Part shown: positions 5,287-49,057 of the stretch, piece by piece | How the letters are laid out: each line of letters starts with the position of its first letter | Position numbering within the stretch: position 1 is the first letter of the stretch | Origin: Selaginella moellendorffii | Lineage: Eukaryota > Plantae > Lycopodiophyta | Reading direction: 5' to 3' | DNA: 64,000 nt | Assembly (NCBI RefSeq): GCF_000143415.4 | Contig: NW_003314290.1 | Coordinates: 1,602,454-1,666,453 of the forward strand | Made by a program: the position numbers and the translations under genes | Notes under the pieces: model-generated | Database searches by the model: none | Told to the model about the DNA's origin: nothing | Seen by the model: only the letters and a program-made list of their open reading frames with translations

Positions 5287-7377
5287 CTACTCTATCCCTT
5301 GCAAAATAAACGTACCTTTTAGAAACTTGCGTTGGACGATCTCCGCTTTCTCGGTCCACATATTTCTGCTCGCATAAATGTTTCCCATCAACATATACGC
5401 TGCCGTGTCCGCTTCATTCATAGCTAGCAGTGATTCAAACGCGAGCCGTCCGACTACCACATCCTTCCACTTGCGACAAGCCCCGAGAACAATCGTCCAT
5501 GTCACAGCAGTCGGTCTGAATGGCATGCTTCTCACGGTCTCCAAAGCATCACCCAGCCGATTGGCACGACCAAAGATATCCACCATGCAGTGGTAGTGCT
5601 CTATCTCGGCCTGAATCCTAAAGTTTGAAACCATTGCCTTGAAGAACCTCTTGCCTCTCTCGACCAGGCCGCAGTGACCACACGCGCTGAGAACGGCCAT
5701 AAAAGTGATGGAGTCCGGTTCCAAGCCTTCACCCCGCATTCTCTCGAACAGTTCCAAGACCCTTTCATGGTCTCCATGACGACTGTATCCCGTTAGCAGC
5801 GCGTTCCAGGCTATCAAGTCCTCCGAGACCAGAGCATCAACTACGTGCTGAGCAGCGACCATTCTTCCGCATCGGCAGCAAGCGTCCACCAAACAAGTGA
5901 CCAGAACTCCGTCCTTCTCAAGGCCCCGTCGAAGAATATCAGCGTGGATCACCGCAGAGATCTCCATAGAGACAACACTGCCACACGCCTTGAGCGCCGC
6001 TGCGAACGTTCGAGCGTCCGGAGCACACCTCTCAGGGTCGTCGGCTCGCAAGCGAAGGAAAATCTCGAGAGCCAGCTCTGGTTCGCCGCTGTCCACATAA
6101 CTCAGTATCAGCGTGTTCCACAGCACTCGATGCCGACGAGAACTCCTGTGAAACACCCTCATCGCATCTGTGAAACTTCCACACTTGAAATACAAGTCGG
6201 CCAACGTACCTAACACATTGGTCTCGGAGTCGTAGCCCAACTTTGCAGCTCGAGTATGGATAGCCATGCCTCGTTCGAGAGAAACCCGGCCAGCGTCTCC
6301 ATCAGTAGTAGCCAGGAGAATGCATGCTTTCAGAGCAGCAACAAAACTGAGAGCATCCGGACTTTGCATAGAAGAGAACAGCTCCAACGCCACCTCCGCT
6401 TCCCTGTTCTCAACGCAGCCTAGCAGCAATGCATTCCACGCTACCACGCTTCTGTGCGGCATGCTTTCGAAAACTTTCCTCGCGTCACCCAAGCTCCCAC
6501 ACTTGGCATACATATCCACCAAGCTGCTCGTCACATATCCGTCTAAGTCATGCTTCCTTCTCGCCGCTTCGGCGTGAATAGCCATCCCTCGTTTCAAGCT
6601 CTCCAGCTTCAGCAACATCCCGTCAACCAGCCGGGCTTCTTCCTTCACCGCCTGGATCGAGCAGTTCTTCAGCGCGGCCACAAAAGTTCTCGCATCCGGT
6701 TCGCAGCTTCCATCACTTTGCATGCTTTCGAACAGCCCCATCCCCTCCTCGGCCTCGCCATTGTCCGCACAGCCCAGCAGCATCGCGTTCCAAGAGACAA
6801 CGCTCCGGCGAGGCATGCTAGCAAAAGCTCGCCGGGCATCCACCAGGCTTCCACACTTCGCGTACATATCCACCAGAGTGTTGGCAAGGAAAACGTTGGA
6901 TTCGTAGCCACTTATTCGAGCTTGCGAGTGAAGAATTCTCCCTTGCTTGAGACACTCCTCTTTGACGAGCTTGCCTTCTATCTCTCGCCCTTCTTCCGCG
7001 GCTGCCAAGCTCGCCAAGGCTTTGAGCGCAGCAACAAAGCTTCGAGCATCTGGCTTGTATCCCTCTCGTTGCATGGAGGAAAAAACTTCCAGTCCCAGCC
7101 TTTCATCCCCATTCTCGGCATAGCCTGCGATCAAAGCGTTCCATGAGACCACATCTCGAGAAGGCATTGCATCAAAAACCTGTTGGGCGTCCACCATGGA
7201 ACCGCATTTTCCATACATGCTGAGAAGACCGTTGCCAAAATACTGGTTCGATTCATCCCCGTCTTGGATCGCATCACTGTGAAGCCTCTGGCCTTTCTCG
7301 AGATTGCGCGACTTGTGGCATGATTTCAACGCGGATAGCAGGGCGTGGATCTGCTCGCATCGATCCGCAAGGGCCAT
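5287..7377 (-). CDS. PLS-class pentatricopeptide repeat protein with E domain and no DYW domain
   Basis: Single-exon 696 aa ORF with repeated LVDMYAKCGSL.DA..VF..M..R.VVSWNA motifs, then EHYHCMVDIFGRA, W..VLGAC and AYMLMGNIYA E motifs. Confidence 0.93.
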   Translation of the reverse strand: MALADRCEQIHALLSALKSCHKSRNLEKGQRLHSDAIQDGDESNQYFGNGLLSMYGKCGSMVDAQQVFDAMPSRDVVSWNALIAGYAENGDERLGLEVFSSMQREGYKPDARSFVAALKALASLAAAEEGREIEGKLVKEECLKQGRILHSQARISGYESNVFLANTLVDMYAKCGSLVDARRAFASMPRRSVVSWNAMLLGCADNGEAEEGMGLFESMQSDGSCEPDARTFVAALKNCSIQAVKEEARLVDGMLLKLESLKRGMAIHAEAARRKHDLDGYVTSSLVDMYAKCGSLGDARKVFESMPHRSVVAWNALLLGCVENREAEVALELFSSMQSPDALSFVAALKACILLATTDGDAGRVSLERGMAIHTRAAKLGYDSETNVLGTLADLYFKCGSFTDAMRVFHRSSRRHRVLWNTLILSYVDSGEPELALEIFLRLRADDPERCAPDARTFAAALKACGSVVSMEISAVIHADILRRGLEKDGVLVTCLVDACCRCGRMVAAQHVVDALVSEDLIAWNALLTGYSRHGDHERVLELFERMRGEGLEPDSITFMAVLSACGHCGLVERGKRFFKAMVSNFRIQAEIEHYHCMVDIFGRANRLGDALETVRSMPFRPTAVTWTIVLGACRKWKDVVVGRLAFESLLAMNEADTAAYMLMGNIYASRNMWTEKAEIVQRKFLKGTFILQGIE

Positions 7378-21003: not shown

Positions 21004-22910
21004 CTAGTATATCCTGCAAATGCCGGGCTTCGTCGTCTTCGTGATCGTAGCCTGCCCGTTAGTCGTCAACTTCGAAAGCTTGGATTTCTTCCTCCTCGAT
21101 GAAATCCATCCCGACGCAAGCTTGTCGAAATCCAGCACCAGCTGCGCGATTGCCAGGAGCAGCGCCAGGAGCATCGACTGCCCGACGCTGCTGCTCTCGG
21201 AGGACATGAGCGTCGCGGTGGAAGACGCCGAGGACGAGGCGAGCGGATTGAGCTGGACTGGAAACTCGCATCCCCCGGTGGATGGATTCGCGGTGGTGAT
21301 CATCCCCAGGCCGTCAAAGACGCAGCTCTCCTCCTCCTGGTTGTTGATCTGGTAGTAGCTGTTGAAAGCGTACGACGCGTTGCCTTGATCGCCAATGTGG
21401 TTGCAAGAGCCGCCATAGACGAGCGCTGTGCAGTCACCGTGCGAGCAAGCGTAGTCGACGCTCTTGGCGAGCTTGGTCATGTCGCCCTCGGGATTGAGCA
21501 CGCACCACCGCCACGGCAAGTACTGGACGTCGCTGGAAAAGTTGGCGAGGCCTGTTCCCAGCACGTCCAGCCCGTACTTTGCTCGGCCGTCGTAAGTGTA
21601 GATCCCCCAGTGCCGCTCAAAGTTGCCGGGAAGGATGCTCTTTTGATCTTCGTCGATGAGCGCGAAGAGGTAAACGTCGAGCTCCTGGTTGGGCCGGAGC
21701 GGCGTCCCCCTGCCGCTGGTGATGTGCGCGAGAAGCCCCTGATTGAAGCGCTGCGCGTTGGCTGGATTCGCGTTCACGTCCCCGTCCGTCGGCCACCCGA
21801 CCTCTCCAACGATGATCTTCATGTCCGGGAAGCCGTTCCTGTTGAGCGCTGCGACCAGGAGATCGTAGCTCGCGTCGAAGACGTTTGTGTAGGTGTTGCC
21901 GTTGAAGTCGTGGATGGCGGCGGCGCCGGTGGTGCTGCCGTCGAAGAACGCGAACTCTTGCGGGAAGTGTGGATCCTGGTGGAGGCTGAGGAACGGGTAT
22001 ATGTTGACGACGAAGGGAGCTTGGTGCTTGGCGAGAGTTGAGACGAGCGTGTCCATGAGCGGCTGGATGTCGGGCCGGAACAGTCCCGCCGATGGTAATG
22101 GGGAGCCGCCATCGCTGAGAACGTCGGCGTTAAGAGGAACCACCGCCTTGATCGGCTCCGCTGAGTTGAGCTTGTCCAGCGCTCCTTGGATGTTTCTCAG
22201 CGCTGGGAGGGTGACGGATTCGTAAGTTGCGTTGTATGCCTTGAGAAAGGGCTCGTTCCCGACTGCCACATATCTGGAACGAAAGAAAAAAAAGAGCAAC
22301 GAAGTTAGCAAGTTTTCAATCGATCCATCGATCGGTGAAGAGAGAAAAAAAAAACTAAAATTTCACATCCATCACTCGTGTCTACGATCAAACCGCGACC
22401 ATGCAGTAAGGAAACATCAAAACCACGAAAAAATATAGAAACAAACCCCAGCATGCAACGAAGAAGGAAAAAAAAGAAGAAAAATAACCGCTACTTTGAT
22501 CTTGGAAGAAAAGACTACCTGATTTTCACCTCGGGGAGATGCTGGGTCACATTCTCCTTGACCCAATCCAGCGCCGCCCGGGGGCTGTTCGCGATCTTGT
22601 CCAGCATTTCGTTTGGAATCCCGACCATGAGCTCCACATCGCTGTTGGCAAACATACCGACGATCTTCGAGTCGGCATCGAAGAGCTTGAGCTTGGTGAT
22701 ATTGCTGGAGCTGAGCATTCGCAGCACAACCTCGGCGGGGAGCCTGTGCGATGCCATATTTCCCCAGTTCACCCCAAATCCCACCGCCGACGACGATCCA
22801 AGTCTCATCGCCGTGACAAGCGTGAGCGCGATCGAGAGCACCAGAGGAGAAAAAGGGGGGTACAAAGAGCAGCAAGCTCTTCTTGGCGCTGACCTCGATC
22901 TCCCCGGCAT
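21004..22910 (-). CDS. GH17 beta-1,3-glucanase with X8 (CBM43) domain, 2 exons
   Basis: FGVNWG, KLKLFDAD, YVAVGNEPFL, IIVGEVGWPTDG, PGNFERHWGI; X8 domain WCVL...YACSHGDCTAL.YGGSCN...NASYAFNSYYQ...C.F.GLG. Confidence 0.94.
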
Positions 22911-23298: not shown

Positions 23299-24289
23299 CT
23301 AGAGGACAAGGTTGAGGACGAAGACGATCAAGCCTCGAATGGCATAAGCGCGGGCGTGAAACTCGCGAGCCTGGAAGAAACGAAAAATCTTGATGATCTA
23401 TCGATCGATCGCAAAAAACTTTGGAAGCTTACCGAAGACGAGCGGGGCGGAGGACGACGCTTGGTGTTCGTGCCGAAATCCGGGACTCGTCGAGGATTCA
23501 CGGACGCGTCCGGATGGTGGCGAGCGCTCACCGGCGAGAGAAGTGGGGTGTCATCTGGTGGACTGTCCAGCCATGGCGAGCAAGAACTGTCGGAGTCATG
23601 GGACGTGTCGTCGTCGTCATCGTCGCTGGGAGCTGTGGCGCAACCATTGTCAGCTGGACTTGAATCGTCCGAGGGAGATGCCGCGGCAGCTGCTGGGCTT
23701 CCGGCCGGAGGAAGATGGATCAAGGATGACTGCTCCACCACTGTGATCGCGAACTTCTGGCCCAGCTGGCAGTGTGAGTAGTAGTCCTTGCTGCATCCGA
23801 AGTAGTAAGTTCCAGGCGCTGGAGCAGTCCACTATCAACAACGAAAAATCAGTTCCCGATTGATCAATCACGTATACTTAAGTCCTGCGACAAAAAGAAC
23901 TCCAAATCGAAAGAACTTACAGTATACACGCCGGAAAGCCCTTCGTCGAGGAGCGTGCTCTCGGTGAAGTTGCAATTCACGTACTCGCTATGGTTCCGGA
24001 ACATGTGAATGTTGTGGAGCTGTGGAAAAAACAGGAAGACTGCTAGATCTTTTAGAAACTTCGTATCGATGAATCGTTTTGTTGCGAGAGTTAAGTTCCA
24101 CATACCGATGTCATCCCCTGGGACGAGAGTGGTCTTGGATGCCCAGGCAGCGTAGTCGGGAGTCTGGCCGCTAAAGATGTTGAATTGCGTCCAGCCGATC
24201 TCGCCCCCTACCTTGAGCACTTGCTTGCTGGAGCAAGGCGGCAGCAGCGACCACATGAGGATAATCCCCGGGAGGAAGAGCGCGTTCAT
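23299..24289 (-). CDS. Phytocyanin (stellacyanin-type) with Ser/Asp/Pro-rich linker and probable GPI signal, 4 exons
   Basis: Signal peptide; VGGEIGW...DYAAWAS, HNIH, GTYYFGCSKDYYSHCQLGQKFAITV (Cu ligands H, C, H, Q). A spliced last exon gives the hydrophobic tail AYAIRGLIVFVLNLVL*. Confidence 0.85.
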
Positions 24290-24786
24290 TGCGATCGAAC
24301 GACCTGGAAATTCCCAAAGATTAGCTCGATATTTCGATATTTCGCGAGAAAGAGAGGATCTTCATCCGGAGAGACAGAGCGATCGATCCGAGCACAAGGC
24401 GCCGATGCTATGGCGTTTCCCGGCCTCGATCGGCAAGATCGCGAAGAAAAGAGAGGAGAAATCTCGCATGCAAAGAAGATTTCCAGCGCGCGGCGGAAGA
24501 CGATCGCATTCCTATCGCGATCGAGAATCCACACAGAGCTTGGAGAATGCGGTGCGTACCAGGAATCCAAGGAAGCCGCGCCGCTCCGCCAAGAGAAGGA
24601 AGACGAGAGTAATGGAAATGGCCAGAGGCGAGGGTTTTAGAAATAAAAGAAACGGATTACTCTTAATCGACCATCGCTAATCGTTGTTATGTTTGAAATA
24701 ATACACAGTCAGCTTTTGGCGCGCAAGCACGTCAGCGAACAACCTGTGAAAATAGGGTTCTTCCCTTCCAGCTAGGGCGCGCGCCC

Positions 24787-26689
24787 ATGAGCTCACTGGC
24801 GCACGGTCGACCGCCTTCAAAGTGCCTGTAGGTGATGATACTGTAAGCGCCGTTTAGATAACTCTTCTCGATTCTACGATCTTGTCCAGGATTCGACATT
24901 CTTTGATGAGCCTTCGCAGGAAGAGATCGTTATAGGAGGAATGCGAGGACAAACTCCTTCGCCGGCGCGGTTTACACCGTCGCCGGCGCCATCGCCAGTG
25001 CCTGGATCGTCTGGAAGCTCCAATGGGGAGTTCTCAAATCAGCAGCGGGTACTCTTTGAAAAAATTTCGCAATGAATGATTCGTTTGAGTATACGCAGCT
25101 TAAAGACGTCCACAAGAAATATCGGATCATCGAAGGAACTCGTCGCATCTATCATGGCGAGAGCGAGGGGATTCTCAGACGGCAAGAGGCCACGCTTGCG
25201 AATATCAGGACTGATAATCAGTCGTTGCGAGAGAATGTCGATAGTTACTTCATACCAGTAAGTATGCTTTCCTCGTTGGTTTATCAATCGTATTTGCTCG
25301 TCTTTGCAGAACTATGAGCTTCAAATGGCTCAGCTCCACGAGGACGCAGCTAAGTTTGGCGAACTCGTTGAGCACGAAGCAAAGAGGCTCGAGGAGCTGG
25401 AACTTGCGGTTGAAAAATCCAAAGCCGACAAACTGGATTACAAAAAAACACAAGGAGGAGTACATGCAGCTCGTGACAGGCATCGCAATGCTTTGATCCA
25501 TATACAGATAACGGAGAACCGGATTCACAAGGTATCTAGTGACACCATGGTAGTCTTACATTATTTTGGTTTCAGGTACTCGTTGATCTGAATATTGTGG
25601 AAAGGCAAAATAGGAATCTGAAGAGAAAGATGAAGGAAATCAGGGAGGAGCGCGAACTTTTCGACGACATTCGTTTGAAGCTCGAAAAGGAGCTTCAGTG
25701 GAAGGAGAAGGAGATGGAGAAATGCATCGAGCTTAGCAGCTTGTTATACGACGAGAGAAATGACATTGAGGAGCGTTTCACAGGTTTATAACCCCGTTGA
25801 GTATTTCACTTATGTTGCAACTTCAGCCATTGTCAAGTTTCTAAACTCACGCTCCTAACGTTTTGACCTTTCCAGATGTCTTGGAGATGCACGGAGACAT
25901 GGAGGCTTACAAAATGTGGGAAGCTTCGAAGGGTTGGGCTGTCATGGAACCAGAGCCTGTAGAAAACTTCTTGCACGTTCAACCGAGATCGGTATGGGAT
26001 TCATGACTTATGACTTGAAACTTATGCATTTCTGTCATGTTCTACAGACGGAGGAACGTAAAGAGCCTATGGATTGCAGCGAGTATTTTAGGCAGTGGAT
26101 TGATGTGAAGTCGATCTCAAACATTCAAGACATCTTGGGGATTGATAGTGTTTACGGGATGGTACAAGCAGTCAAGGAGTTGCAGCAAAAGAATGTTGCA
26201 ATTATTGCCAGGATGAACGAGCTTGTCAATGTAAGTTGTCTTACAGTTCCTTTTGGGCAGATTTGGGACAATTCACATTTTCAGGAAATGGACACCATCA
26301 AAGCCTTGCCTAAGCCTTTTGACTTAAATATCGAAAGTGCTCCAATCGATCCAGACGCAAAAAAGAAAGTTGACATGGAGGCAATAATGGACAAGATATC
26401 TAGCCTTTTGAAAGAGCTAGATTTTGAAGATGAAGAGTACATACTTATTATAAACGAGATGAAAAAACGAGTTGGCAAAGTCTTCAGTGAAGCAGGTATG
26501 TTTATTCTTTCACTAGCAACGACTGACTTTACTTCCGCAATTCCAGGTTGCGCTGTTGACGGAAACGCGCTGACAAATGAGAAGGGTAAGGCCCGATTAG
26601 AGGAGGCCTTGGGTCAGTGGTACAATACTATAGACAGTTTTGTCGACCAACTCATAAAACAAGCGAAGGAGTCTGTACAGAAGAAGTAA
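24787..26689 (+). CDS. Outer dynein arm docking complex subunit DC2 (ODA1/CCDC114/CCDC63)-like coiled-coil protein; start uncertain
   Basis: Spliced translation LKDVHKKYRIIEGTRRIYHGESEGILRRQEATLANIRTDNQSLRE...QGGVHAA...IQITENRIHK|VLVDLNIVERQNRNLKRKMKEIREERELFDDIRLKLEKEL..KEKEMEKCIELSSLLYDERN follows the DC2 consensus order. Confidence 0.75.
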
Positions 26690-26785
26690 ACATTCGAGGT
26701 AATCTTATGATTCAAGAATTAAAATGAATTGCTAGCAGATTGTGTACAGTTTGAGAATGCAAGAGGAGTTTCCAGCAGAGCTCAG

Positions 26786-28184
26786 TTACAAACGAGCTAG
26801 CTGCCGAACGTTTATGGGCTCAACTACAGACTGATCCCCTTCCAGGATTCCTTTTCCAAGCACGTAATTTGCGGCCTCCGAAGTATGGTATGGATCCCAG
26901 AAAAAATGTTCCGTCCTGTTGGAGCAAACAGAGACGGAAGGGATGCATGAGATCAGACCTCTGTACGGGCCACCAGCGCCACAGCAGGCCGTGTCGCTGT
27001 TTGCAAATCCTGCAAGGGGGAGGAACATTCAGCTCAGAAGCTTCAAAACTTCACAAGCATGGCGAAGCTCCTACCGTATTTCCCCGGGTTTTTTATGACG
27101 GTGGTGACGGTGTCATAAGTGTTGACATAGACGAACTTGGCATCCGGAAACTGCCCGTTGAGATCGAAAACAGTCTGCCTCAGCGCCTTGTTGAAGTTGA
27201 GAACCAGCTCGTTGGGTTGGGGAGCACAGGTACTGTTTCTTTGGAAGTTGACCGTGAGCTGATATGGAATGCAGCCTATTGGACCCGCTCCTGCGATGAT
27301 GAACTTGCGGGCGTCCAGCTTGTACGCATCCTGGCAAAGAAGCGGTGAGACCGAGATGAGCGAGAACTCTCGAAAAATCCAACAAGGAGGCAGAAGCTTC
27401 TTACAGTCAGGAGCTTTTTGTACGTGGAGACTAGGCGGACTTGGAACTGCTGGGGGGTGTACATAAGAGGCGTGGCAGTGACAGGCGCAACGTAATTGTT
27501 GAGGTAGTCATTGGAGCCGATGACAAAGCAGAAAATAGACTTGGAGAGCATCTGGTACGCCGCCTTTTGTCCGAGCAGGCCGATGATCTGGGACCGGGTG
27601 TTGCCGTAGTACTCAATCTGCTTTCCAAGGGGCAGTCTCTGCAGCTGCGAAAGCCAGGCAAAGGACCAAACAGGTTGAGCAGCAAGAACGATCGAAGAAA
27701 ACTTACGAAGTAGAGCCCGGTCTCGTCGAGAACACCAGCTCCGCCGGACGCGTAGTTGACACCTTTGAGGATGGCAGTCCCGTTGGTGCTTGGATCCAGA
27801 TACGGCGGTGCTAGTGGAAGTCCAAGCTCCTGGGCTGTTGAGAAAGGAGACAAGGCAGCACAGGGTGGAAGTTAGGAGGATGGTAGCGCTGACGATACTA
27901 TTTAGTGCTACTCGGCGCTTACCAACAACGTCGGTCACGGTGAGGCCATTGCAGAAGCGCCCGGTTGCAACGCTGCCCTGGAAGTCGATGCCGTTGTGGG
28001 AGTGATTGGCCTGGGAGAGCGACTGGAGGAACTTGTTATTGCCAGAGTCGACCAGGGAATCGCCAAAGACGAAGAATGCTGGGACTTGAGGAGCTTCGGC
28101 TGCGCGGATGGTCTCGAGGGACGCGAGAAACAAGAGAAGGAGCGAAGTGGAAAGGGCGGCGAGAGTGATTGTCGCCTCCTCCAT
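26786..28184 (-). CDS. GDSL esterase/lipase, multi-exon
   Basis: Signal peptide, FVFGDSLVDSGNN, TGRFCNG, GVNYASGGAG, IGSNDY, ACCG, FFWDPYHTSEAAN. Confidence 0.95.
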
Positions 28185-28299
28185 GGCAGCGAAGTGGCGG
28201 GGCGGCGAGCTTCCACTCCTCTCCAGCACCGGCGTTTTACTTATATGTACATTTGGAGCGGTGTAGATTAATTAGGTGAAGACTAGCGACTAACCGGAA

Positions 28300-31250
28300 A
28301 CTAAGGGTAAAGATTTATTGATTTATTACCAAGGTATTACTATTTTCTCTAGAGATAGGGCATAATTATAACTTTATATCCTTTTAAATTTGTCATATGA
28401 AAGTAGTGGGATGCTAAATTAATTAATTTGTCAAGTGGTAAAAATTATGAAGAGAGGATTTGCAGTGCATCAGATATATATATATATATACATATATACA
28501 TACATATATATGTTTATATGTTTAATTCAGATTACTATATATTAGTGATATTGTAGTTGAAATCAAGAATAATAATATTATTTCTAAACCATGACCAAAA
28601 TAATTTGATACTTATGGTGCATAATACAAACATGAAATTTCAGTATAAAAACTCTTTTATTGCTTCAAGTATAAATGATAAACCTGATTTATTAAAGTAA
28701 TTACTTTATATATTATATTTAGTTTTATAAATATATTAATATTTTATTCTGTTAAGAAAGGCTATAGTGTTAATCCATAAGGACAATAGATTTCATACAT
28801 AATTAATTATTAATTATTTTTATTTTGTGTTGTAATATTTTATTTCAAATTGGTGTGATATCTCAAGTTGTTATCTACTAATAATATTATTAGTTTCATA
28901 AAATCTAAATTGCTAGATATTGCCAATATTATTAACTCCATTATTTAATTTTACTTATATAAATATGTTAATTCTTCTTTTTTTTTGAGATGAGAAAGGT
29001 TATGATTTTTTTTTTCATAAACACAACTTTAGCACCACTCTATTTATATAAGCTAATTATTTTTTTTAGTTTTCTTAAAAAGTATTTTATTTTTAAAAAA
29101 TAATATTTTTCATTATAAAAAAACAACTCTACCTTCTCATGTTTAAATTGTCATCTAGGTTTTTCCTACAAACAAGTGGAATAAAAGATATTGGGATGAA
29201 TACTTCATAAAACTTTAGCTCTACACTTGCATGATCCATTAGTCAAAGTTTGTAATCCATGATTGTTCATTATCATTTGTGGCATATGTAAAACTTTATT
29301 TAAGTCAAAGAATTGACTTCTTTACTTTTAGTGTTACTCATAGCATTTATATAATAGGGATATAATCATCTTATAGTTAATCACTTGATGGATAATTATA
29401 TTGTGATTATGATTTAAAGAAAAAATTAATCACATAATTACATATTAGTTTTATATGTGCATTAATTGCCAAGTATGATTATAAAAGAAGGCACTCTCAA
29501 GTTTCACACCCATCTATATATTTTCTATAAACATTTATACTTATATAAATAAATAAATGAATAAATAAAAATTATAATGTATCCACTTTTATAGCTCATT
29601 TTAAATAATTAAAGTGAAGAGCTTGAAAGATAGTCTTCTAGATTTTTTTTAATATATATATATATAATCCCATGAATAAATAATGTACCATTTTTATATT
29701 TATTGGTTAAAGGTTTTGAAATACATGAAGTAAACTATTTTTTAGGTTTAAGTAGTGTTAGTCCACAAAGTTTAAATACAACAGTTTACACTCTTTGAAT
29801 TCATGATGATAAAATGTTAGTATTCTGATAATTATCATATTATTCTTTACTTTGGTGATTATCATAATTAATGCACTAAATGTTTTGTGATACTGTAGTC
29901 TATAATTTCTAAATATAATAGTAAAAATCTTAAAATAAAATTTATTATAATACACTTATATTTTGCTATTAATGTTGAAGGGCATAAATATATTAACTTA
30001 AAACCTAACTATATATGTGTGTGTTTTATAATGTATTTAAATTAAATTATTGTATGTTAGTGATTTTGTAGCTCTATGTGATTTAAATTGCTTTAAGTTA
30101 GGGACATTGTCATATTCATTTGCAAAACTTGATACATGATCTATATCAAGGAATGTTTTTTTTTTTATTTTTTTATATATAAATTGATTATTATTTTTCT
30201 TCATTTGAGAAAATCAATAGTTTTTATACATCCATAGTTATTTATTAATCTTAACATTTTTCAAGTATATTTTATTTCTTATTGATATGAATTTCAAGGT
30301 TATAATATACTTTCAGTTAAGATCCATGTTGTTGCATGTTAGTAACATTATTAAACTTATTACCTCTACTTGTTTCATGATTATTTTTAGGTGAATTTTT
30401 TTTTCTTTATTTTACTCTTATAAATATGTTGATTGTTCAGCTAATTTAGCTAAGAAAGACCATAGCTTTTATGCATAAGCTTAAAATTAACATCACTTTA
30501 TCTATATGAGGTAATTGCTAGATTTTTCAGTTTAAGATATTTTATTTTAAAAAACTTCTTCTTTATTCTTAAATTAAAATTTGTTTTTGAATGTTATGTT
30601 ATTAACAATCATGATAAATGTAGCAAGCTGATATGGTTGAATATTGAAGGTATAAAGATTAGTAATAGTGGTAGTGCTGATGGCATTGAAAATATAAATT
30701 CTAAAGTTTATTTTAATTCTTTATTTGTAAGCTTTCACTACTATTGCAAAATATTTATTCAATCATTCATTTATATATTGCTTACAAGGTCTTGCAACAC
30801 CTCTGAAGAAACATGAGATGGATGGGTTCAAATATGCCACAGTGACAATTACTGTGATTGTTTGTCATCCAATAAAGATATGTATAAAGAAATTTAGATG
30901 GGATAAAGGTGCTTTAAATCCCACTTGATAGCAACTTGTGCATTGGGGATACCTTAATTGTGAGATATATACAAATAGATTATGATAAGTAGACAAAGTT
31001 AATCTTATATGTTAATATGATTATATTTTATGTATTAGCTCAGTTACATTACTTTGGAGGTCATTATCAATTCGAGTTTTGAACTTACACATGGCTGCTG
31101 GTTTAAGCTGGACACGACCAGCCCTTTGACCAAACGAATTAGAGAAAGTTTAAACCATAATAAAGGTTAGATTGAGCTATATCCTAGAATATATTTGAAT
31201 ATTCATGATTTAATCTTTATAACGATCAATATTGACAAGGGAAGGGCGAT
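28300..31250. mobile_element. Very AT-rich tract, probably a decayed DNA transposon
   Basis: Abrupt GC drop, (TA)n near 28474-28520 and no long ORF. The minus strand at about 29150-29250 reads LMDHASV..FIPLVC, weakly like a DDE_1 transposase. No TIR or TSD found. Confidence 0.4.
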
Positions 31251-31566
31251 TTAAAACATATACGCCAGAAAGGAGGTCAAGCCGAGCGGCTCGATTAAAA
31301 AATACCAACACTTGGCTCTTCCTTGATCAGCCACGTGGACGTAATTAGGGTTCTTGCGTGATGTTCCCATCTTTTTACCTTATAAGGCCCTAGCGCATCG
31401 CATTTATAACTCTTCAGGATGGTCTTTATGGTGGTATTGATCTTGGCCGTGGGATTGCAGATTCTCTCCGACTGGGAGATATAAATGCTGGCCCTTGGTA
31501 ATTTGTTTTGAATAGGATCCCATAGCTTGGGAGTGAGAGAGAGAGAGAGAGAGGAAATCCAAAGCT

Positions 31567-32711
31567 ATGGTGGAACTAGGATCCCTGCTGTGGTGTGTTG
31601 CTCTGCTGGGCTTGGTTGTATACAAGGGAATTTGCATCCATCTGAGGCGCCAGCGAGCAGAGTTTATAGCATCTCTAGATCCCGTACGAGATGCGCACAA
31701 GATCGTGTGGTATCTCTATGCGGTGGAGTTCCCATTTCTCTCCCAGAAAGCTCTCGAGTTTGGCACCATCCAAACCCTGGGCATTCCCTCCATCACCAAG
31801 CTCCTGTACAAGACCAAGTATGGGCTCAAGGATCCCCAGAAGCGCGCCGCCGAGACCAACATCTTGGTGAGCGAGTTCCTCCACCACCACGTCGATAGCG
31901 ACCGTGGATCCTACGCGCTGAGGAGATTGAATGGCATCCACGCCCAATTCAAGATCCCAAATCACGAGTTTGTCTATGTGCTCTGCTTGAACGTCGTCAA
32001 GCCCATGGATTTTTGCCGCGAGTAAGTGACTAAGTGGTAGTGGTTCTTTCGATGTGTTCTTCCGGTGTTCTTGGAATAGATCTCACACAATGTATGTATA
32101 TGTTGTTTGATCAATGCAGGTTTGGATTCCGGGCGTGGACGCCCCGCGAGGAGCTCGCGTCCTACACGCTCTGGCACGACATTGGGCTCCGGATGGGACT
32201 GAAAGACATCCCGGAGAACATCCAGGCGATGCGCGACTACATCGACGAATTCGAGGAGAAGTACGCCAAATTCGACGAGAAGAACAAGTCCATCGTCCAG
32301 GAGCTCAAGCACCTGGTGCTCGACTCCTTCCCGCGCCGCGTCCAGCCGGTGGTGGAGACGGGCATCTGCGCGCTCATCGGCGAGCGCATCCGGATCGCCA
32401 CCGGGCTGCCAAAGCCACGCGCGATCGTCGAGTGGGCGGTGCTGTCGGCGCTCAAGCTCCTGTCGGGCACGATGGTGTCGATCTTCATGCCGCCCAGGAC
32501 CGTCGCGGGGGCCAAGGGGAGCATCGACGTGGACTGGAGCCCCAACCCGGAAGCTCGCCCGGAGGAGCTCCGCCCGCTCAACGTCAATGTGTATCGCCCG
32601 CCGAGCTTCGAGAAGGGGTACAAGCTCGCGGAGCTGGGAGCGCTCAAGCCGGGGAAGATCGGGCCGCGCTATGGCGATGGAGCTCTGCTGTGCCCATTGT
32701 TTCGCGCCTAG
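31567..32711 (+). CDS. MpaB/DUF2236 (ER-bound oxygenase/rubber oxygenase-like) protein, 2 exons
   Basis: N-terminal TM anchor; EFPF..QKALEF..IQTLGIPSITKLL..T...KRAAETNILVSE...RGSYALRRLNGIHAQFKIPN.EFVYVL; intron 32022-32119; FGFRAWT..E......WHDIGLRMGLKDIP. Confidence 0.8.
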
Positions 32712-37547: not shown

Positions 37548-40500
37548 CTATCTAGGAAGAACCACTCCGATGCACTGCGAGTCATCGTTCTCCGCCAGCT
37601 TCTCCGACAGCACGATACTGCTGTCCAATCTCCTGAAAGAACTTCCTGGCTCGCTATCAGCTAGGGAGTCAGGCCTGGTTGCAGCGAGACGAAGGGCCTC
37701 TAGATCGCGTACGACGTCGGACATTGAAGGACGAGCCTGTGGCTCGTCGCTCGAGCAGGCCAACGCTAGCCGCACGAACCGTTCTAGCAGCTCGGAAGCG
37801 AGTGGTCCCATGCGGGAATCTACCACGTTCAGAATCATTCCCGCCTCGAATGCCAATCTCACCTGCATTAAACAAAGAAAAGTCAATCTCCCAAACAGAA
37901 ACACGGTCTTTCACCTCTCGGACAATGTTTTTTCCATGAGAGATTGGTGGCATTCCCGTTAGGAGCTCCAGCAGCACCACACCAAAGCTGTAAACGTCGC
38001 TCTTGTCTGTCAGCTTATGGGTCAGAAAGTATTCTGGATCCAGGTACCCCTGCTCAAACCATGGAAATGGCTCGTAAAAGACAGCCTGAGTTTGAAAATT
38101 AATACTTACCGGTGTGCCTCTCACAACTGTTGAAACGTGTCCTGACAGTCCGTCAGCGTCTGAAACAGGTGCAAGCTTGGAAAGGCCAAAATCAGCAACC
38201 TTCGGATTGTTCTTCTCGTCCAAAAGAATGTTGGTCGATTTAATATCGCGATGAAAAATGGGAGGGTTAGCTTCCGTGTGAAGATACAGTATGCCTCTTG
38301 CCGCGCCCAAAGCTATAACCAAGCGAGACCTGACATTCAGCGGTCTTGTAAATGTCGCTGTAAGAGCAGACAATGTCAAAAAAGGATAGAAGTCAAGCCA
38401 ATTGCAGAAAAACGTACGTGATAGATGATCCCGTAAAGTTCCTCCACTCATGAATTCATACACGAGCATCTGTCGCAATGAAGACCCAGTGATCGAGCCG
38501 TCAGTTCTAGATTTCCGGCCTACCTGTTCGTCGTCGTCCACATAGTAGCCAATAAGCGAAACCAGATTTCGATGATGAAGTCTCGACAGCAACTGTATTT
38601 CATTGTGAAACTCATTGGTTCCGTTTCGAGAGGCCTCCTCAGCACGCTTGATAGCAACAACAGTCCCGTCGTCCAGAACTCCTCTGTAAACTTTTCCATA
38701 GCCACCCTGACCAATCTGGTTAGATTCGTGAAAGGATTCTGTGGCTCTATCCATCTCCTCCCATGTGAAGCTTGTGACGCCTTCAACTTTGAAAGATAGG
38801 TTCCTTCTCTTCTTCCACGCTGCAAGCAATGGTACACATCTCAGAGCTAAAACATAGAAGATGCAGAAGACTTACAGTTATTTTGGTCGTCCTTGAGTTT
38901 CTGAACAAAACAGATTAGAACGGTAGCAACGAAGCCTACAACTCCAACAAGAACACCAACAAAGACGGGAATAGCACTGGCGAAAAATTTCTTTCTCGAA
39001 GGTAAAATTCCACTCGTAAAAAGTTCTGTAAGAAAACAAAACAAACAAACTAAGTGTTACAGCAAAGAAAGAAAGAAACAGAACACTTACCAATCCCATA
39101 AGGAGGATCGAAGCTGAGGAGCTCTCTTGGCCCAAATAAGGCATTATCAGGGATTGACCACTCCGTGAAAGCAAGAAAGATTCTTTTCACCTCTGGTTGA
39201 TTGAACCTTCGATCATCACCTAGCATTGAAGGAAATATACTCAGCTTCACGAGGAGTCTCTGCCCGGCCCAGGAATACGAGGTCACCGAAAGATGCGACA
39301 CTCCCAATCCAGCAGCCATGTACTTCTCGTAAGCTCGAAGATGCGGTTCAAAGAAGCGGAAGCCCGGACTCTTCAAACGAACAAGGACCCGAATCGGAGA
39401 AGCACACTTGCAATTACCATCGGCTGCCAAACCGGGGACAAGTTCGTCAATGTCAGGATTACAGATGTCCTTCGCGCAGTTATTGATGTTGCTGCTATCA
39501 GATGGCCCGTGGTCAGGTACATTATCGAGGCTCTGATGCTCGCAAAACTTGAATGCGGCCTGCCAGACGCACACTTGCGCGTTTCCAAAGACCCTGCAAC
39601 AAGTATAAACTGTAGGTAAGTAGATCCGCACGGCCAACATGGCACAGTACCAAAGTTTGATATTGCTGGAGAAACTAAAACTCGGGAACGATGATACAGT
39701 CAGCGAGTTCCCTTGGAGATCCCTGTCGTGATTACAGTAGACGATTAGACGAGTTGGATAGCAAAAACTGAAGTACATACAGCACAAGTAATTTGTCGCT
39801 CGTTCTACCACGGAGGGTGATTAAAAGCTGATCCAGAGAACCATTCAAGAGATTGCTCTGTAAAGACCTGGATTTTCCACGAAGTGTAAGCTACCAAGAG
39901 AACGCAGTGACTCACATCAATTCTAGAGTCTCGATGCCCGCAGCTTCGACTGGAATGTCGCCAGTAAACTGATTATTTGAGAGATCTCTGTCAACCAAAC
40001 TGTTAAAGGGCGGATTTTCCAGTGCATCTTACATCGTTATTAGCGAGGGCAAACTCATGTTCGGAAAGACTCCGTCCATTTGATTTTTGCTCAAATCCCT
40101 GCCGGAAAAAGGACGAATCTGTAAAAAGAACTGCATGCTTAATTCTGCCACTCACAGAGACTGTAGCTTGGTGAGTGCAGAGAGATCGGGCATCGATCCT
40201 CGCAAGTTGCAGTTTTTCATGCTCCTGTAAGGTAAGACTTGAATCGAGCACAACACCATCGTTCATCAACTTACAGCTTGATAAGCTGTACAAGCGACGT
40301 CGTATACGTGCTCGGAATCTCCTGTGCATCAAAAGGATTGTTGTCCAACTGCCTGTAACAGAGGAGGATCAGTTTATGACTATGCATCGAGTCTGTATAC
40401 AGTATCTGGAGTTGCGATATGTTGCCAATGTCGGGTGGAAGCTTCCCAGTTAAATTATTGTTATCTAAAAGTCTTCGCTACCAAAATATCAGTTCGACTT

Positions 40501-45990: not shown

Positions 45991-46519
45991 CGCTGCCCTT
46001 CCACGCCCAGGCGGAGCCTTTGATGCCCTACCTAGCTCCCCAAAAACCCTAGACTCGAAGATTAAAAATAAAAGTTCAATAAAAAAGCGTGAGTAATTGA
46101 GAACTTTTAGGTTATTTTATGTAAAACTAAAAAATTAAAGATTATTAGTTTTATTTGATAGAAATTAAGAATTTGTAAGTATTTTAATGATATAAAAGAG
46201 TTTAAATATTTAAAAATCTATTTCATAATTTAAATATAAAGATGTGTGATAAGGAGATTTGTGATTGCAAAATTAAATGATTAAGTGTGTGAGGACCATT
46301 TGCTTTATATAAGCTAAGGTTTTTAAGTTAATTATATTTCTGTATCTTATGCACTCACATTAATGAAGTACATCTCCATTATTAAATAGCAAAACGCTTA
46401 TAATTGTTACTTCTTCACCAATACTTTCAACTAGGGTTTATATAAGTGAATACATGTTAAAAGAGGAAACATTATAGAATTTTTTTTTTTATAATTCACC
46501 CCATTAGAAAATAACAACA

Positions 46520-47650
46520 ATGCATATGAATAGAAGAAGAAGATTTCAAAAAGGCCATTAAATGATGGGCTAAATAAAAAGGTTACATTTAAAAAATATA
46601 ACATTTTAAAGTCATTGTTATCAGCTTAGAGAGATGGAATTCAAAAGAAAAAATTTAAAAATTTAAAATTATGCTTATACTTGAAAATGCAATCCTTGAA
46701 AAACTCTTTATAATTTGCCAAAAAATTAAGTAACTAATGTGGAAAATCAGTGTTATAAAAGTAATAGTTTTTTTTAGCTCCCACGAAGAACCAAACCCAT
46801 TCTCCCATAGAATACTTGAAAGATTGTGATAAAGTGGATTTTTAAAACACCATCTAAAACTCATATATAAAATTGTAAAATCATTAGGAATTAACTGCAT
46901 AAAGTTTATAAACAAGTCTGTCATAGATGCAACCTACCAAAACTTAAAGAGTATATACACCATTACAAGATACATACTAGAGAGAATATAGAACTATGAT
47001 GAAGTTGTAATATTTATTAGTCAAATTCAAGGTGTGAAGGTGTTAACTCTATAAAGTTTTAAATTGTTTTACATAATCACTCTAAATAATATTGAGTATC
47101 TCACTACACTGACATATTGCAATGCAGGAGATAAATAATTCTAAATATATACATCTTCCAAACAGATTAAAGAATGGCTAACTAGATAATAGGTTGTTAG
47201 TCAAGTGTATTAACTATTAGTGAAAAAGCATGGATCAATAATGTTTTATATCTTAGTTGTTTTGACTACTTTGTAAAATTTATAGACTGTACACTTACAC
47301 ATTTTTATAGTAGATGGTCATAAAAGCTATTGCAACTTTGTGGCTTTGGTGAAAATAGCATCCCTAGGCATTAACATAACACTAATCCCACCTATACATC
47401 ACAAAAACTATATGTTTTTAGATCATTCAAAATTAGTTTTTAAGAATTTTGTTATCGATAAAGATGGATGATGAATATAATACTTACAAAAAAGGATATT
47501 GCTTAATTGGTTTCAAAAGTGTCACTTATTGCACTTAAAGAGTAACATCAAAGCTAGGTTCATACATTATCTATTAAACAACATAAGAATGAATAATGAG
47601 TATAGAGTGAATGCATTATACACAACCACCTTGGAAGAAATTTAATGTAA
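46520..47650 (+). mobile_element. Heavily mutated pogo/Fot1-like (CENP-B HTH + DDE_1) transposase remnant inside an AT-rich tract (about 46060-48900, resuming after 57640)
   Basis: Broken translation PNPFSHRILERL**SGFLKHHLKL (TPF..G.PG..WW.GF..RHP.L), NI*NYDEV (IWN.DET), EYLTTLTYCNAG, EKAWINNVLY, FIVDGHKSY...GINITLIPP (LILDGH.SH...LPP). Confidence 0.75.
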
Positions 47651-49057
47651 GAAATTAAAGAGAATAACTCAAGAGACACTCTATAAGGGTTTAAATATAG
47701 AAGAAAAAGGCTTATGAACAAAAATGCACCCTTTTTTTCAATTAATTAATGATTTTAAAATATTTAGAGTTAAATGTCCTTAAGTTTGAATACTACTAGG
47801 CTAGATGACTTTTTGGGAAGCTTAAATTTATAAGCTTATATTCAAGTAGTAAAGGACTTAATGATGATGACTGAAGACTATAACAATGAAAGAAATAACA
47901 AAAAAACCATAAAGGAAATCAAGATAACAAAGCAAAACTAGCAAAACTAGTATTCAAAACTTGCAATGTTTCATCACCAAGACTTCTAAGCTTGCTTATT
48001 ATAATAGGCATTGCAATTAACTTAAAGAAATTTTATGTTAAGCTTACAAAAAAAATTGAAAAGAAGGCACATATAGACGAAGAGAAAAAGTAAAGAAAGA
48101 ACACTAAGAAACAACAACTCAAACAAAAGGCTCACAAACAAAACAAAGCTAAAAGAAAAAAAAAAAGGGAGAAATACATGTTGGAATTTACAACTTAATT
48201 AAGACACATCTTTTATATACTTGGAAAGAATGAGTAAAGATCACCACCACCTCCAAAAAATGAGTTAAGCAAACTTCAATCTCAAGCTACAAGAAGCTGT
48301 AAGATCTACATGAGGAGGCTAGAGAGAGAATCACAATATAGACAATAATGAAATCTATATTCCTACTCAAACACAAGAACTTGCAAAACCAAACAAAAGA
48401 AATGAATCAATCATCAAGTTAAAGGTAAAAACGCTTAAAACTAATGTTTACTTCTAACTTTTACTATGTTAAACTAAGGCACTTCAAGATCATTCAATCA
48501 TAGGCACTTTGAGCTCAGCCAATCATAGATGTTTCAAAACATTAAACTTCTAAATAAAAGCTAGAAATGAAATAAAATCTTAAAGCTCTTTATAGATTTA
48601 AGAATCTTAGAGACCCTTAAGGATTTCAAACAAGATCTTGGAACTCCACAAACCTAAAGATTTAGAGATTGTTTCAAGATTTAGGAACTTTGAGACTTTA
48701 TTTTTCTAAGATCCTTGCAATGCAAAGATCAAATAAAAAACATGCACAAAAGAAGAAGGAAACAAAAGGTCAAACCATCTCTCACAAAAGTCCCAAATAG
48801 CCCAAAGTCAAAGCATGACCAACATCTTAGCAAAAGAAAAGATTGATAATGATGGCTTGAAGAGGGAGAGATGTAGCCATGCAAGTGGAAAGAAAATGGC
48901 AGCCCAAGTACAAGGAGATGGTGAAAGAAGCAAAAGAGATGGTAGGCCAAGTATAATAAGATTGTGAGGGAAAGGAGATGGCTACAAAGTGTGAAAGAAA
49001 TGGCTATGATTGGGAGAGGAGATGGTTATCCACATGTTGCCCAATGGTGGAAGAAGG

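What the first reader, a model, noticed from the sequence alone, without database searches (positions are those of the whole stretch)
24787..26689. Outer dynein arm docking subunit homolog in a lineage reported to lack outer arms
Seen: an apparently intact multi-exon gene following the DC2/ODA1/CCDC114 motif order (YRI.E..R..Y..ES...+RRQ; GGV.AA; ENR+.K; R.ER..FD....KLEKEL) but visibly diverged. Known: sperm flagella of bryophytes and lycophytes lack outer dynein arms and the genomes lack outer-arm heavy chains. Inference: an orphaned docking protein kept or repurposed, for example as an axonemal ruler or a multilayered-structure component.
Basis: partly seen in the sequence, partly recalled or inferred. 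Interest (0 to 1): 0.7.

Follow-up and report, generated by a model that had tools for sequence, protein, structure and literature searches.

The report
Orphan dynein-docking protein in spikemoss
The spikemoss Selaginella keeps an intact gene for the protein that normally anchors outer dynein arms to flagella, and so do liverworts, ferns and Ginkgo, although land plants have no outer arms; it has probably taken on another sperm-flagellum job.

Summary
Window 24941-26689 (+) carries an intact 8-exon gene with GT-AG introns of 44-92 nt, encoding 449 aa. It is Selaginella moellendorffii SELMODRAFT_416187; the allele on the second haplotype is also intact.

It is a true DC2/ODA1/ODAD1 homologue:
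- Pfam ODAD1_CC scores 46 bits against a cut-off of 27.
- A profile of the land-plant orthologues hits the cryo-EM chains of Tetrahymena ODA-DC (4e-32) and Chlamydomonas DC2 (2e-30), colinear over about 400 residues.

Orthologues occur in Diphasiastrum, Ceratopteris, Ginkgo, Marchantia, Riccia and Calypogeia, and Selaginella has a second paralogue. No plant without flagellate sperm appeared. These proteins form one clade whose topology follows the species tree. About 1.9 changes per site separate it from a tight star of canonical ODAD1s.

The plant proteins lack the canonical C-terminal block and carry their own motifs. In liverworts dN is 0.11 while dS is saturated, so selection is strongly purifying. 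It is not a pseudogene.

Published work reports no outer-arm heavy chains in any land plant.

Function is inferred, not shown. The most likely role is an outer-arm-independent coiled coil on the doublet surface of sperm axonemes. Databases already label the family automatically, but I found no paper discussing the paradox.

The parts
24787..24831 (+). It is a 14-codon ORF ending in TAG, so 5' leader or uORF and not part of the CDS.
   Evidence: Frame translation MSSLAHGRPPSKCL*.
24941..25048 (+). Exon 1 (36 aa, Pro/Ser-rich N-terminal tail), phase 0 donor. The CDS start used by the other haplotype's annotation.
   Evidence: P0181 (457 aa) begins at the equivalent ATG. Liverwort orthologues have a similar Pro/Ser-rich N-terminus.
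25072..25074 (+). Alternative start ATG (MNDSFEYTQ...) used by the annotated model SELMODRAFT_416187. It lies inside intron 1 of my model.
25099..25257 (+). Exon 2 (53 aa). Carries the YRI.E..R..Y..ES....RRQ motif and starts the region homologous to DC2.
   Evidence: The 53-aa exon size is the same in Marchantia and Calypogeia.
25310..25531 (+). Exon 3 (74 aa). Carries the family-invariant GG and ENR(L/I) motifs.
   Evidence: The 74-aa exon size is the same in liverworts.
25576..25783 (+). Exon 4 (69 aa plus 1 nt). The best-conserved coiled-coil segment (N..N..L...M..(L/I)R.E...F...KLEKEL...Y..R). It passes the Pfam ODAD1_CC cut-off on its own.
   Evidence: 38.9 bits against cut-off 27. (best PDB hits are Tetrahymena ODA-DC, CCDC63 and DC2).
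25876..25991 (+). Exon 5. Plant-specific Trp-rich linker (AY.(M/L)W...(E/K)GWA...P.P), predicted to be disordered or to break the helix.
   Evidence: pLDDT below 50 at P0001 residues 228-253.
26048..26230 (+). Exon 6 (61 aa). Carries the W(I/V)(D/E).K...N(I/V)QD(I/V)LGID motif, which aligns with the IQD.TGI.D motif of canonical DC2.
26285..26495 (+). Exon 7 (70 aa plus 1 nt). Plant-specific conserved C-terminal motif DEE...I(I/V).EMK(K/R)..G.VF.EAG. An alternative in-frame acceptor at 26261 adds 8 aa (IWDNSHFQ) in the annotated models. No orthologue has those 8 residues.
26547..26689 (+). Exon 8 (C-terminal helix) and the TAA stop at 26687-26689.

Best explanation
This is an intact, vertically inherited Selaginella moellendorffii gene for a divergent member of the DC2/ODA1/ODAD1 family. 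[quoted passage not shown]

Shown here:
- It is homologous to DC2, colinear over about 400 residues.
- Orthologues were found only in land plants that make flagellate sperm.
- There was a burst of change on the stem of the plant clade, with loss of the canonical C-terminal block and gain of plant-specific motifs.
- Strong purifying selection followed.

Inferred:
- When the streptophyte lineage leading to land plants lost the outer arms, the docking coiled coil was kept because it binds the A-tubule surface on its own.
- It now works in sperm flagella without dynein, as a homodimer or, in Selaginella, perhaps as a dimer of the two paralogues.
- It lies along the doublet as a periodic surface filament that stabilises the doublet or positions something other than an outer arm.
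For: Identity and integrity:
- The gene model has 8 exons and 449 aa.
- It is identical to SELMODRAFT_416187 apart from two splice/start choices.
- The second-haplotype allele is intact, with 12 differences in 1749 nt.

Family:
- Pfam PF21773 ODAD1_CC scores 46.2 bits against a cut-off of 27.
- phmmer against the PDB: Tetrahymena ODA-DC 7e-12, Chlamydomonas DC2 1.6e-4, kinetoplastid distal DC2 9e-4.
- Profile of the plant orthologues against the PDB: 4e-32, 1.9e-30, 5.8e-15; CCDC63 7e-7; CCDC114 4e-5; Tetrahymena DC1 only 0.045.

Distribution:
- Orthologues occur in Diphasiastrum, Ginkgo, Calypogeia, Ceratopteris, Marchantia and Riccia, plus a Selaginella paralogue.
- Among the 150 best of 1.84 billion representatives, only these and one 108-aa fragment are plant-type.

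Phylogeny:
- The plant clade has 100% support and its topology follows the species tree.
- Exon sizes of 53, 74 and 69 aa are shared with liverworts, and the paralogue has the same exon borders.

Selection:
- Marchantia against Riccia gives dN 0.11 with dS above 3, i.e. saturated.
- Liverwort terminal branches are 0.05-0.08, after a stem of 1.6.

Context:
- No outer-arm heavy chains are found in any land plant (PMC9237703).
- Established knowledge, not tested here: the Chlamydomonas docking complex assembles on doublets without arms, and DC1 and DC2 form a coiled-coil heterodimer (the heterodimer is cited in PMC3842995).
- A 1985 paper title reports that Tetrahymena dynein binds Marsilea axonemes that lack outer arms (reference list of PMC4947347). 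I could not read that paper.
Against: - There is no expression or localisation evidence for this gene or any orthologue.
- The two Selaginella alleles differ by 6 non-synonymous and 4 synonymous changes (omega about 0.5). This does not differ significantly from neutrality, so constraint in Selaginella itself is not shown by polymorphism.
- The plant proteins have lost the conserved canonical C-terminal block.
- They carry fixed changes at sites 78-98% conserved in canonical ODAD1, for example K to D, K to I and I to M in all eight plant sequences. Microtubule-binding geometry may therefore have changed.
- No moss or hornwort orthologue was recovered here. A weak Physcomitrella BLAST hit to DC2 (5e-10) is listed in the PMC4361367 supplement.
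- The attachment point of the plant clade within the family is unresolved.
Confidence: 0.55

Rival explanations
1. Repurposed away from the axoneme. The protein is kept for another microtubule structure of plant spermatozoids (the spline or multilayered structure, or the basal-body apparatus) or for a cytoplasmic step of spermiogenesis.
For: - A very long stem branch.
- Loss of the canonical C-terminal block and charge-reversing fixed substitutions.
- New conserved plant-only motifs.

All of these point to new partners. Restriction to flagellate plants fits any sperm-specific structure, not only the axoneme.
Against: The N-terminal 200 residues, which are the best-conserved part of DC2-type proteins, keep the family signature. 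There are no data placing any DC2 relative outside the axoneme. This is purely an inference.
Confidence: 0.25
2. It is still a docking complex for an outer-row structure. Land-plant axonemes carry some unrecognised outer-row appendage, non-dynein or built from non-canonical dyneins, that this protein anchors.
For: - A moss preprint describes 'clear outer dynein arms' in TEM of P. patens Reute sperm (10.1101/728691), which conflicts with the general view.
- There is strong constraint in liverworts.
- The title of Hyams 1985 implies that vacant sites on Marsilea axonemes are competent to bind dynein.
Against: - No alpha, beta or gamma heavy chains are found in any land plant (PMC9237703).
- ODA8, ODA16, C11orf70 and ODA10 orthologues are reported absent from Physcomitrella and/or Selaginella.
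- The canonical C-terminal block is missing.
- The TEM labelling in the preprint may simply be a mislabel.
Confidence: 0.1
3. A decaying relic. The gene is a non-functional leftover of the lost outer-arm system, drifting towards pseudogenisation.
For: - The allelic comparison gives 6 non-synonymous to 4 synonymous changes.
- Terminal branches in Selaginella are long (about 1.0).
- There is no expression evidence.
Against: - The reading frame is open and all splice sites are canonical in both haplotypes and in the paralogue.
- Orthologues are retained with conserved intron positions since the liverwort-vascular plant split.
- dS is saturated while dN is 0.11 in liverworts.
- Conserved plant-specific motifs exist.

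A neutral sequence would be unrecognisable after such a time.
Confidence: 0.05
4. An unrelated coiled-coil protein whose resemblance to DC2 is compositional.
For: Coiled coils give spurious low-complexity matches. The Pfam match covers only profile positions 3-86 of 287, and Foldseek is uninformative (best E 0.06).
Against: - Profile E-values of 1e-30 to 1e-32 against DC2-type chains only (apart from DC1 at 0.045 and one chance row at 0.079), colinear from residue about 6 to about 415.
- Non-heptad signature residues are conserved (GG, ENRL, Y..R, IQD..GI.D).
- 346 family hits below 1e-3, with no other coiled-coil family among the named ones.
Confidence: 0.01

Closest known systems
[quoted passage not shown]
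   Same: - Colinear homology: plant profile E 1.9e-30, DC2 residues 30-371.
- The same signature motifs: GG, ENRL.KA, N..N..LR, LR.ER..F, IQD.TGI.D.
- All-helical coiled-coil architecture.
   Different: - 449 aa against 552.
- The canonical C-terminal conserved block is absent.
- Plant-only Trp-rich linker and DEE..PII.EMKK...VF.EAGC motif.
- Fixed replacements at canonical near-invariant sites.
- The host has no outer arms to dock (PMC9237703), and no DC1/ODAD3 partner is known in it.
Tetrahymena thermophila ODA-DC coiled-coil protein (PDB 7moq chain Z)
   Same: The best single match: phmmer 7.4e-12 over residues 8-204, and profile 4e-32 over chain residues 6-415.
   Different: Same differences as for DC2. 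In Tetrahymena it is part of a docking complex beneath a three-headed outer arm.
Human/bovine ODAD1 (CCDC114) and CCDC63
   Same: The same Pfam family (PF21773). Profile hits of 7e-7 (CCDC63) and 4e-5 to 3e-3 (CCDC114).
   Different: Much weaker similarity. The animal proteins pair with ODAD3/CCDC151 and cause primary ciliary dyskinesia when lost, whereas the plant protein exists without arms.
Selaginella paralogue XP_024526347 'outer dynein arm protein 1-like' (P0153; locus L001)
   Same: 39% identity, the same exon borders, sister to the window gene in the tree.
   Different: A separate locus on scaffold GL377571. The annotated model is N-terminally truncated, although the missing exon is present. 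It lies 4.8 kb upstream of a HAP2/GCS1 gene.
CCDC39/CCDC40 96-nm axonemal ruler (functional analogy only)
   Same: A long coiled coil lying on the doublet surface that sets a periodic address. This is what an arm-less docking filament might amount to.
   Different: There is no sequence relationship. It has a different periodicity and a different site. The analogy is an inference, not tested.

Membership tests
DC2/ODA1/ODAD1 (CCDC114/CCDC63) family | Match to Pfam PF21773 (ODAD1 central coiled coil) above the curated cut-off | tested here: met
   46.2 bits against a cut-off of 27 for P0001. Exon 4 alone scores 38.9 bits. Only profile positions 3-86 of 287 are covered.
DC2/ODA1/ODAD1 (CCDC114/CCDC63) family | Colinear full-length similarity to DC2-type chains of solved axoneme structures, ranking above other coiled coils (reciprocal profile test) | tested here: met
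   Plant profile against the PDB: 7moq_Z 4e-32, 6u42 DC2 1.9e-30, distal DC2 5.8e-15, CCDC63 6.7e-7, CCDC114 4e-5. DC1 reaches only 0.045, and no other coiled-coil family appears (the one remaining row, 0.079, is a viral RNA polymerase).
DC2/ODA1/ODAD1 (CCDC114/CCDC63) family | Family signature residues (GG, ENRL, N..N..L, LR.E, Y..R, IQD..GI.D) | tested here: met
   Nearly invariant columns are shared by plant and canonical sequences. Overall, 47% of highly conserved canonical residues are kept in the plant proteins.
DC2/ODA1/ODAD1 (CCDC114/CCDC63) family | Conserved C-terminal block of canonical members (consensus ...LG.IE.R...GP...RPLT..EL) | tested here: not met
   None of the eight plant proteins aligns to these columns. 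They end earlier with a plant-specific helix.
DC2/ODA1/ODAD1 (CCDC114/CCDC63) family | Co-occurrence with outer-arm dynein heavy chains, and the function of docking them | not testable with these tools
   Only this window of the genome is readable. The literature reports no outer-arm heavy chains in any land plant, Selaginella included (PMC9237703), so the classical function cannot apply.
DC2/ODA1/ODAD1 (CCDC114/CCDC63) family | Heterodimeric partner (DC1/ODA3 or ODAD3/CCDC151) in the same organism | not tested
ODA10/CCDC151 is reported absent from Physcomitrella (PMC3842995). The only other Selaginella relative seen is a lineage-specific paralogue.
DC2/ODA1/ODAD1 (CCDC114/CCDC63) family | Binding to the A-tubule with 24-nm periodicity | not testable with these tools
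   This needs cryo-EM, cryo-ET or in-vitro binding.
DC1/ODA3 and ODAD3/CCDC151/ODA10 (the other docking coiled coils) | Closer similarity to DC1/ODAD3-type than to DC2-type proteins | tested here: not met
   Tetrahymena DC1 reaches only E 0.045. No ODAD3/CCDC151 chain was reported at E of 1 or less, although to my knowledge bovine and human doublet entries contain it.

The most novel reading that the evidence does not exclude
Land-plant sperm axonemes still carry a 'ghost' docking lattice. This would be a remodelled ODAD1 filament without a DC1/ODAD3 partner, laid every 24 nm on the A-tubule where outer arms used to sit. It would be kept for hundreds of millions of years because it stiffens the doublets or addresses a plant-specific non-dynein appendage. 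That would explain why heterologous dynein could bind arm-less fern axonemes in the 1985 experiment.
Probability: 0.35. Interest if true: 0.75.

Novelty: new variant of a known kind. Interest (0 to 1): 0.6.

Why it matters
Outer-arm loss in land plants is a textbook example of axoneme simplification, and the docking complex is usually treated as a dedicated accessory of the arms. A docking subunit that survives the loss of its cargo, changes fast and then freezes under strong selection says two things. The docking coiled coil has, or acquired, a function of its own on the doublet. It also gives a natural separation-of-function variant of a human ciliary-dyskinesia protein (ODAD1). The question can be tested directly in Marchantia with the knock-out, tagging and motility toolkit already used for MpCAFA (10.1101/2025.04.26.650577). 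The structural components of plant sperm cilia are otherwise largely unknown.

Tried and rejected
- Word-based protein searches found almost nothing beyond the query itself. The coiled-coil words saturated the 8000-candidate limit. Only the exhaustive representative search gave the family.
- Exon-by-exon Pfam and PDB searches were blank except for exon 4.
- Foldseek against the PDB was uninformative for a long-helix model. The best hit was a Leishmania distal DC2 chain at E 0.06.
- dN/dS between the two Selaginella haplotypes (10 coding differences) and between the Diphasiastrum tandem copies (3 differences) has no statistical power.
- The AU test of a 'plants + Chlorokybus' clade did not finish in the time allowed. 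The point where the plant clade attaches stays unresolved.
- Hodges et al. 2012 (New Phytol.) and Hyams 1985 (J Cell Sci) are not held. I could not check whether they already comment on DC2 or on docking sites.
- The colour coding of the DC2 cells in Desai et al. 2015 (Selaginella 2e-4, Physcomitrella 5e-10) is not readable in the held text.
- Rejected readings: ODAD3/CCDC151-type or DC1-type identity; pseudogene; chance coiled-coil similarity.
Full report
**1. What is in the window**

Reading 24000-28000 on the + strand and translating the three frames gives a clean eight-exon gene. The exons are 24941-25048, 25099-25257, 25310-25531, 25576-25783, 25876-25991, 26048-26230, 26285-26495 and 26547-26689. 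That is 1350 nt of CDS encoding 449 aa. All seven introns are GT-AG and 44-92 nt long.

On the joined model: it was never typed or sent to any search tool. Searches were made exon by exon by reference, then through the stop-free reference 25859-26686, and after that with the database's own entries. The join was computed only inside scripts from window.fa, to check the frame and for local alignments.

**2. Identity**

The stop-free reference retrieved P0001, which is SELMODRAFT_416187 of Selaginella moellendorffii (430 aa). It is identical to my model except for two choices:
- It starts at ATG 25072.
- It uses an acceptor at 26261, which adds 8 residues that no orthologue has.

The 90%-identity cluster also holds P0181 (SELMODRAFT_409385, 457 aa), the allele on the second haplotype. 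Its CDS starts at the ATG equivalent to 24941. The allele differs at 12 of 1749 positions, giving 6 non-synonymous and 4 synonymous codon changes, and it is equally intact. The neighbouring genes are ordinary: glycosyl hydrolase 17/X8 upstream and a GDSL lipase downstream, the same in both haplotypes.

**3. Family**

- Exon 4 alone passes the Pfam ODAD1_CC cut-off (38.9 bits against 27). Its only meaningful PDB matches are docking-complex chains.
- Full-length P0001 scores 46.2 bits in Pfam.
- phmmer of P0001 against the PDB gives 7.4e-12 to the Tetrahymena ODA-DC chain 7moq_Z, 1.6e-4 to Chlamydomonas DC2 and 9e-4 to a kinetoplastid distal DC2.
- The exhaustive search of 1.84 billion representatives found 346 relatives below 1e-3. 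The named ones are ODA1/ODAD1 proteins from across the eukaryotes: Chloropicon, Chlorokybus, Cyanophora, Andalucia, Hammondia, Phytophthora, Heterosigma and a choanoflagellate.
It hit 7moq_Z at 4e-32, DC2 at 1.9e-30, distal DC2 at 5.8e-15, CCDC63 at 6.7e-7 and CCDC114 at 4e-5 to 3e-3. Tetrahymena DC1 reached only 0.045, and the one remaining row (0.079) is a viral RNA polymerase, a chance match. The alignments run from about residue 6 to about residue 415 of the chains.

So this is a DC2-type protein. It is not a DC1/ODAD3-type protein and not a chance coiled coil.

**4. A land-plant subfamily**

The closest relatives come from these species:

| Species | Group | Note |
|---|---|---|
| Diphasiastrum complanatum | lycophyte | two tandem copies |
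| Ginkgo biloba | gymnosperm | |
| Ceratopteris richardii | fern | |
| Calypogeia fissa | liverwort | |
| Marchantia polymorpha | liverwort | |
| Riccia sorocarpa | liverwort | |
| Selaginella moellendorffii | lycophyte | second gene; RefSeq calls it 'outer dynein arm protein 1-like' |

Scoring all 150 best representatives with a plant HMM and a non-plant HMM shows that only these proteins and one 108-aa metagenomic fragment are plant-type. No angiosperm or conifer protein appears, although such an orthologue would be expected to rank near Ginkgo. No moss or hornwort member was recovered. The supplement of PMC4361367 lists a weak Physcomitrella BLAST hit to DC2 (5e-10) and a Selaginella hit of 2e-4.

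The plant proteins align over their whole length and share motifs that canonical ODAD1s lack: a Trp-rich linker and a C-terminal DEE..PII.EMKK...VF.EAGC block. Intron positions are conserved. Exons of 53, 74 and 69 aa occur in Selaginella, Marchantia and Calypogeia, and the Selaginella paralogue has the same borders. That paralogue also has an N-terminal exon that its annotation missed.

**5. Evolution**

In both trees the plant proteins form one clade with 100% support. Its inner topology follows the species tree: liverworts, then lycophytes, then Ginkgo plus fern. The two Selaginella genes are sisters.

Under the site-heterogeneous model the clade is separated by about 1.9 changes per site from the canonical ODAD1s. 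The canonical proteins from all supergroups form a tight star. Where the plant clade attaches is unresolved, and the AU test did not finish.

Against 95 columns that are at least 70% conserved in 64 canonical proteins, the plant proteins keep 47% of the residues. All eight share replacements at near-invariant sites, for example K to I, K to D and I to M. None has the canonical C-terminal block. It is my inference that charge-reversing changes of this kind reflect a change of coiled-coil partner.

After this burst the protein froze, at least in liverworts. Terminal branches there are 0.05-0.08. Marchantia against Riccia gives dN 0.11 while dS is saturated above 3. Marchantia against Calypogeia gives dN 0.17. 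This excludes a decaying relic for the family as a whole. For Selaginella itself the allelic ratio (omega about 0.5 from ten changes) is uninformative.

**6. Structure**

An AlphaFold2 model built with a 61-sequence alignment is all-helical, with mean pLDDT 78.8. Helices span residues 5-59, 64-109 and 113-222. A low-confidence linker follows at 228-253, and then four more helices. Foldseek found only a weak best match, fittingly a Leishmania distal DC2 chain at E 0.06. Fold search adds little for long helices.

**7. The premise**

- Lucas and Geisler (PMC9237703) found no outer-arm heavy chains in any land plant, while Chara and Klebsormidium keep beta and gamma.
- Hyams and Campbell 1985 is the ultrastructural reference cited by later papers.
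- ODA10/CCDC151 is reported absent from Physcomitrella (PMC3842995).
- ODA8 and C11orf70 are reported absent from Selaginella and Physcomitrella.
- One conflicting statement exists. A moss preprint labels 'clear outer dynein arms' in TEM of P. patens Reute sperm (10.1101/728691).
- I could not scan the Selaginella genome itself. Earlier notes of this scan mention inner-arm-related genes only.

**8. Mechanism**

Shown: homology, integrity, a distribution restricted to flagellate plants, and purifying selection.

Inferred: the protein still lies on the A-tubule as a periodic coiled coil without dynein. This rests on established knowledge that the Chlamydomonas docking complex binds doublets independently of the arms, and that DC1 and DC2 form a coiled-coil heterodimer (the heterodimer is cited in PMC3842995). 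[quoted passage not shown] I could not read that paper, so I use it only as a lead.

The rivals are relocation to the spline, multilayered structure or basal apparatus; docking of an unrecognised outer-row structure; and a relic. Each is weighed in its own section of this report.

**9. Novelty**

The family label already exists as automatic annotation (UniProt ODAD1_CC; the RefSeq name of the paralogue). Desai et al. 2015 tabulated weak DC2 hits in Selaginella and Physcomitrella without discussing them. In seven full-text searches I found no paper that describes or discusses a conserved, remodelled ODAD1 subfamily in arm-less land plants. Hodges et al. 2012, the most likely place for such a remark, is not held.

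I therefore rate it a new variant of a known kind and of moderate-to-good interest. The claim can be tested directly in Marchantia.

Noticed in passing
L001:12163-13358 (S. moellendorffii scaffold GL377571), 4.8 kb downstream of the paralogue at L001:5718-7358: The second Selaginella ODAD1-like gene lies close to a HAP2/GCS1 gamete-fusion gene, with an ABC transporter and a SWEET gene between them. These are two sperm-related genes within 6 kb, which may be coincidence.
   Followed up: no
L001:5718-5879: The RefSeq/JGI model of the paralogue (P0153, 351 aa) is N-terminally truncated. An exon 56% identical to exon 2 of the window gene lies just upstream of the annotated start.
   Followed up: partly
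window 26261-26284: An alternative in-frame acceptor adds 8 residues (IWDNSHFQ). Both annotated Selaginella alleles use it, but no orthologue has these residues. It is either alternative splicing or an annotation choice.
   Followed up: partly
window 28001-32000 and 46001-48000: Two strongly AT-rich stretches (GC 0.27-0.35 against about 0.48 elsewhere). A TA/CA-type microsatellite lies around 28430-28560.
   Followed up: no
window 5287-7377 (-), 21004-22311 (-), 37669-38829 (-): Ordinary neighbours: an intronless PPR protein with an E motif, a glycosyl hydrolase 17 with an X8 domain, and a protein kinase. A GDSL lipase lies on the minus strand at about 26786-28229.
   Followed up: partly
L006 and L007 (Diphasiastrum complanatum chromosome CM055092, about 265 kb apart): Two near-identical tandem copies of the orthologue (2 aa differences) with very long introns (genes of 26 and 33 kb), against 1.75 kb in Selaginella.
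   Followed up: partly
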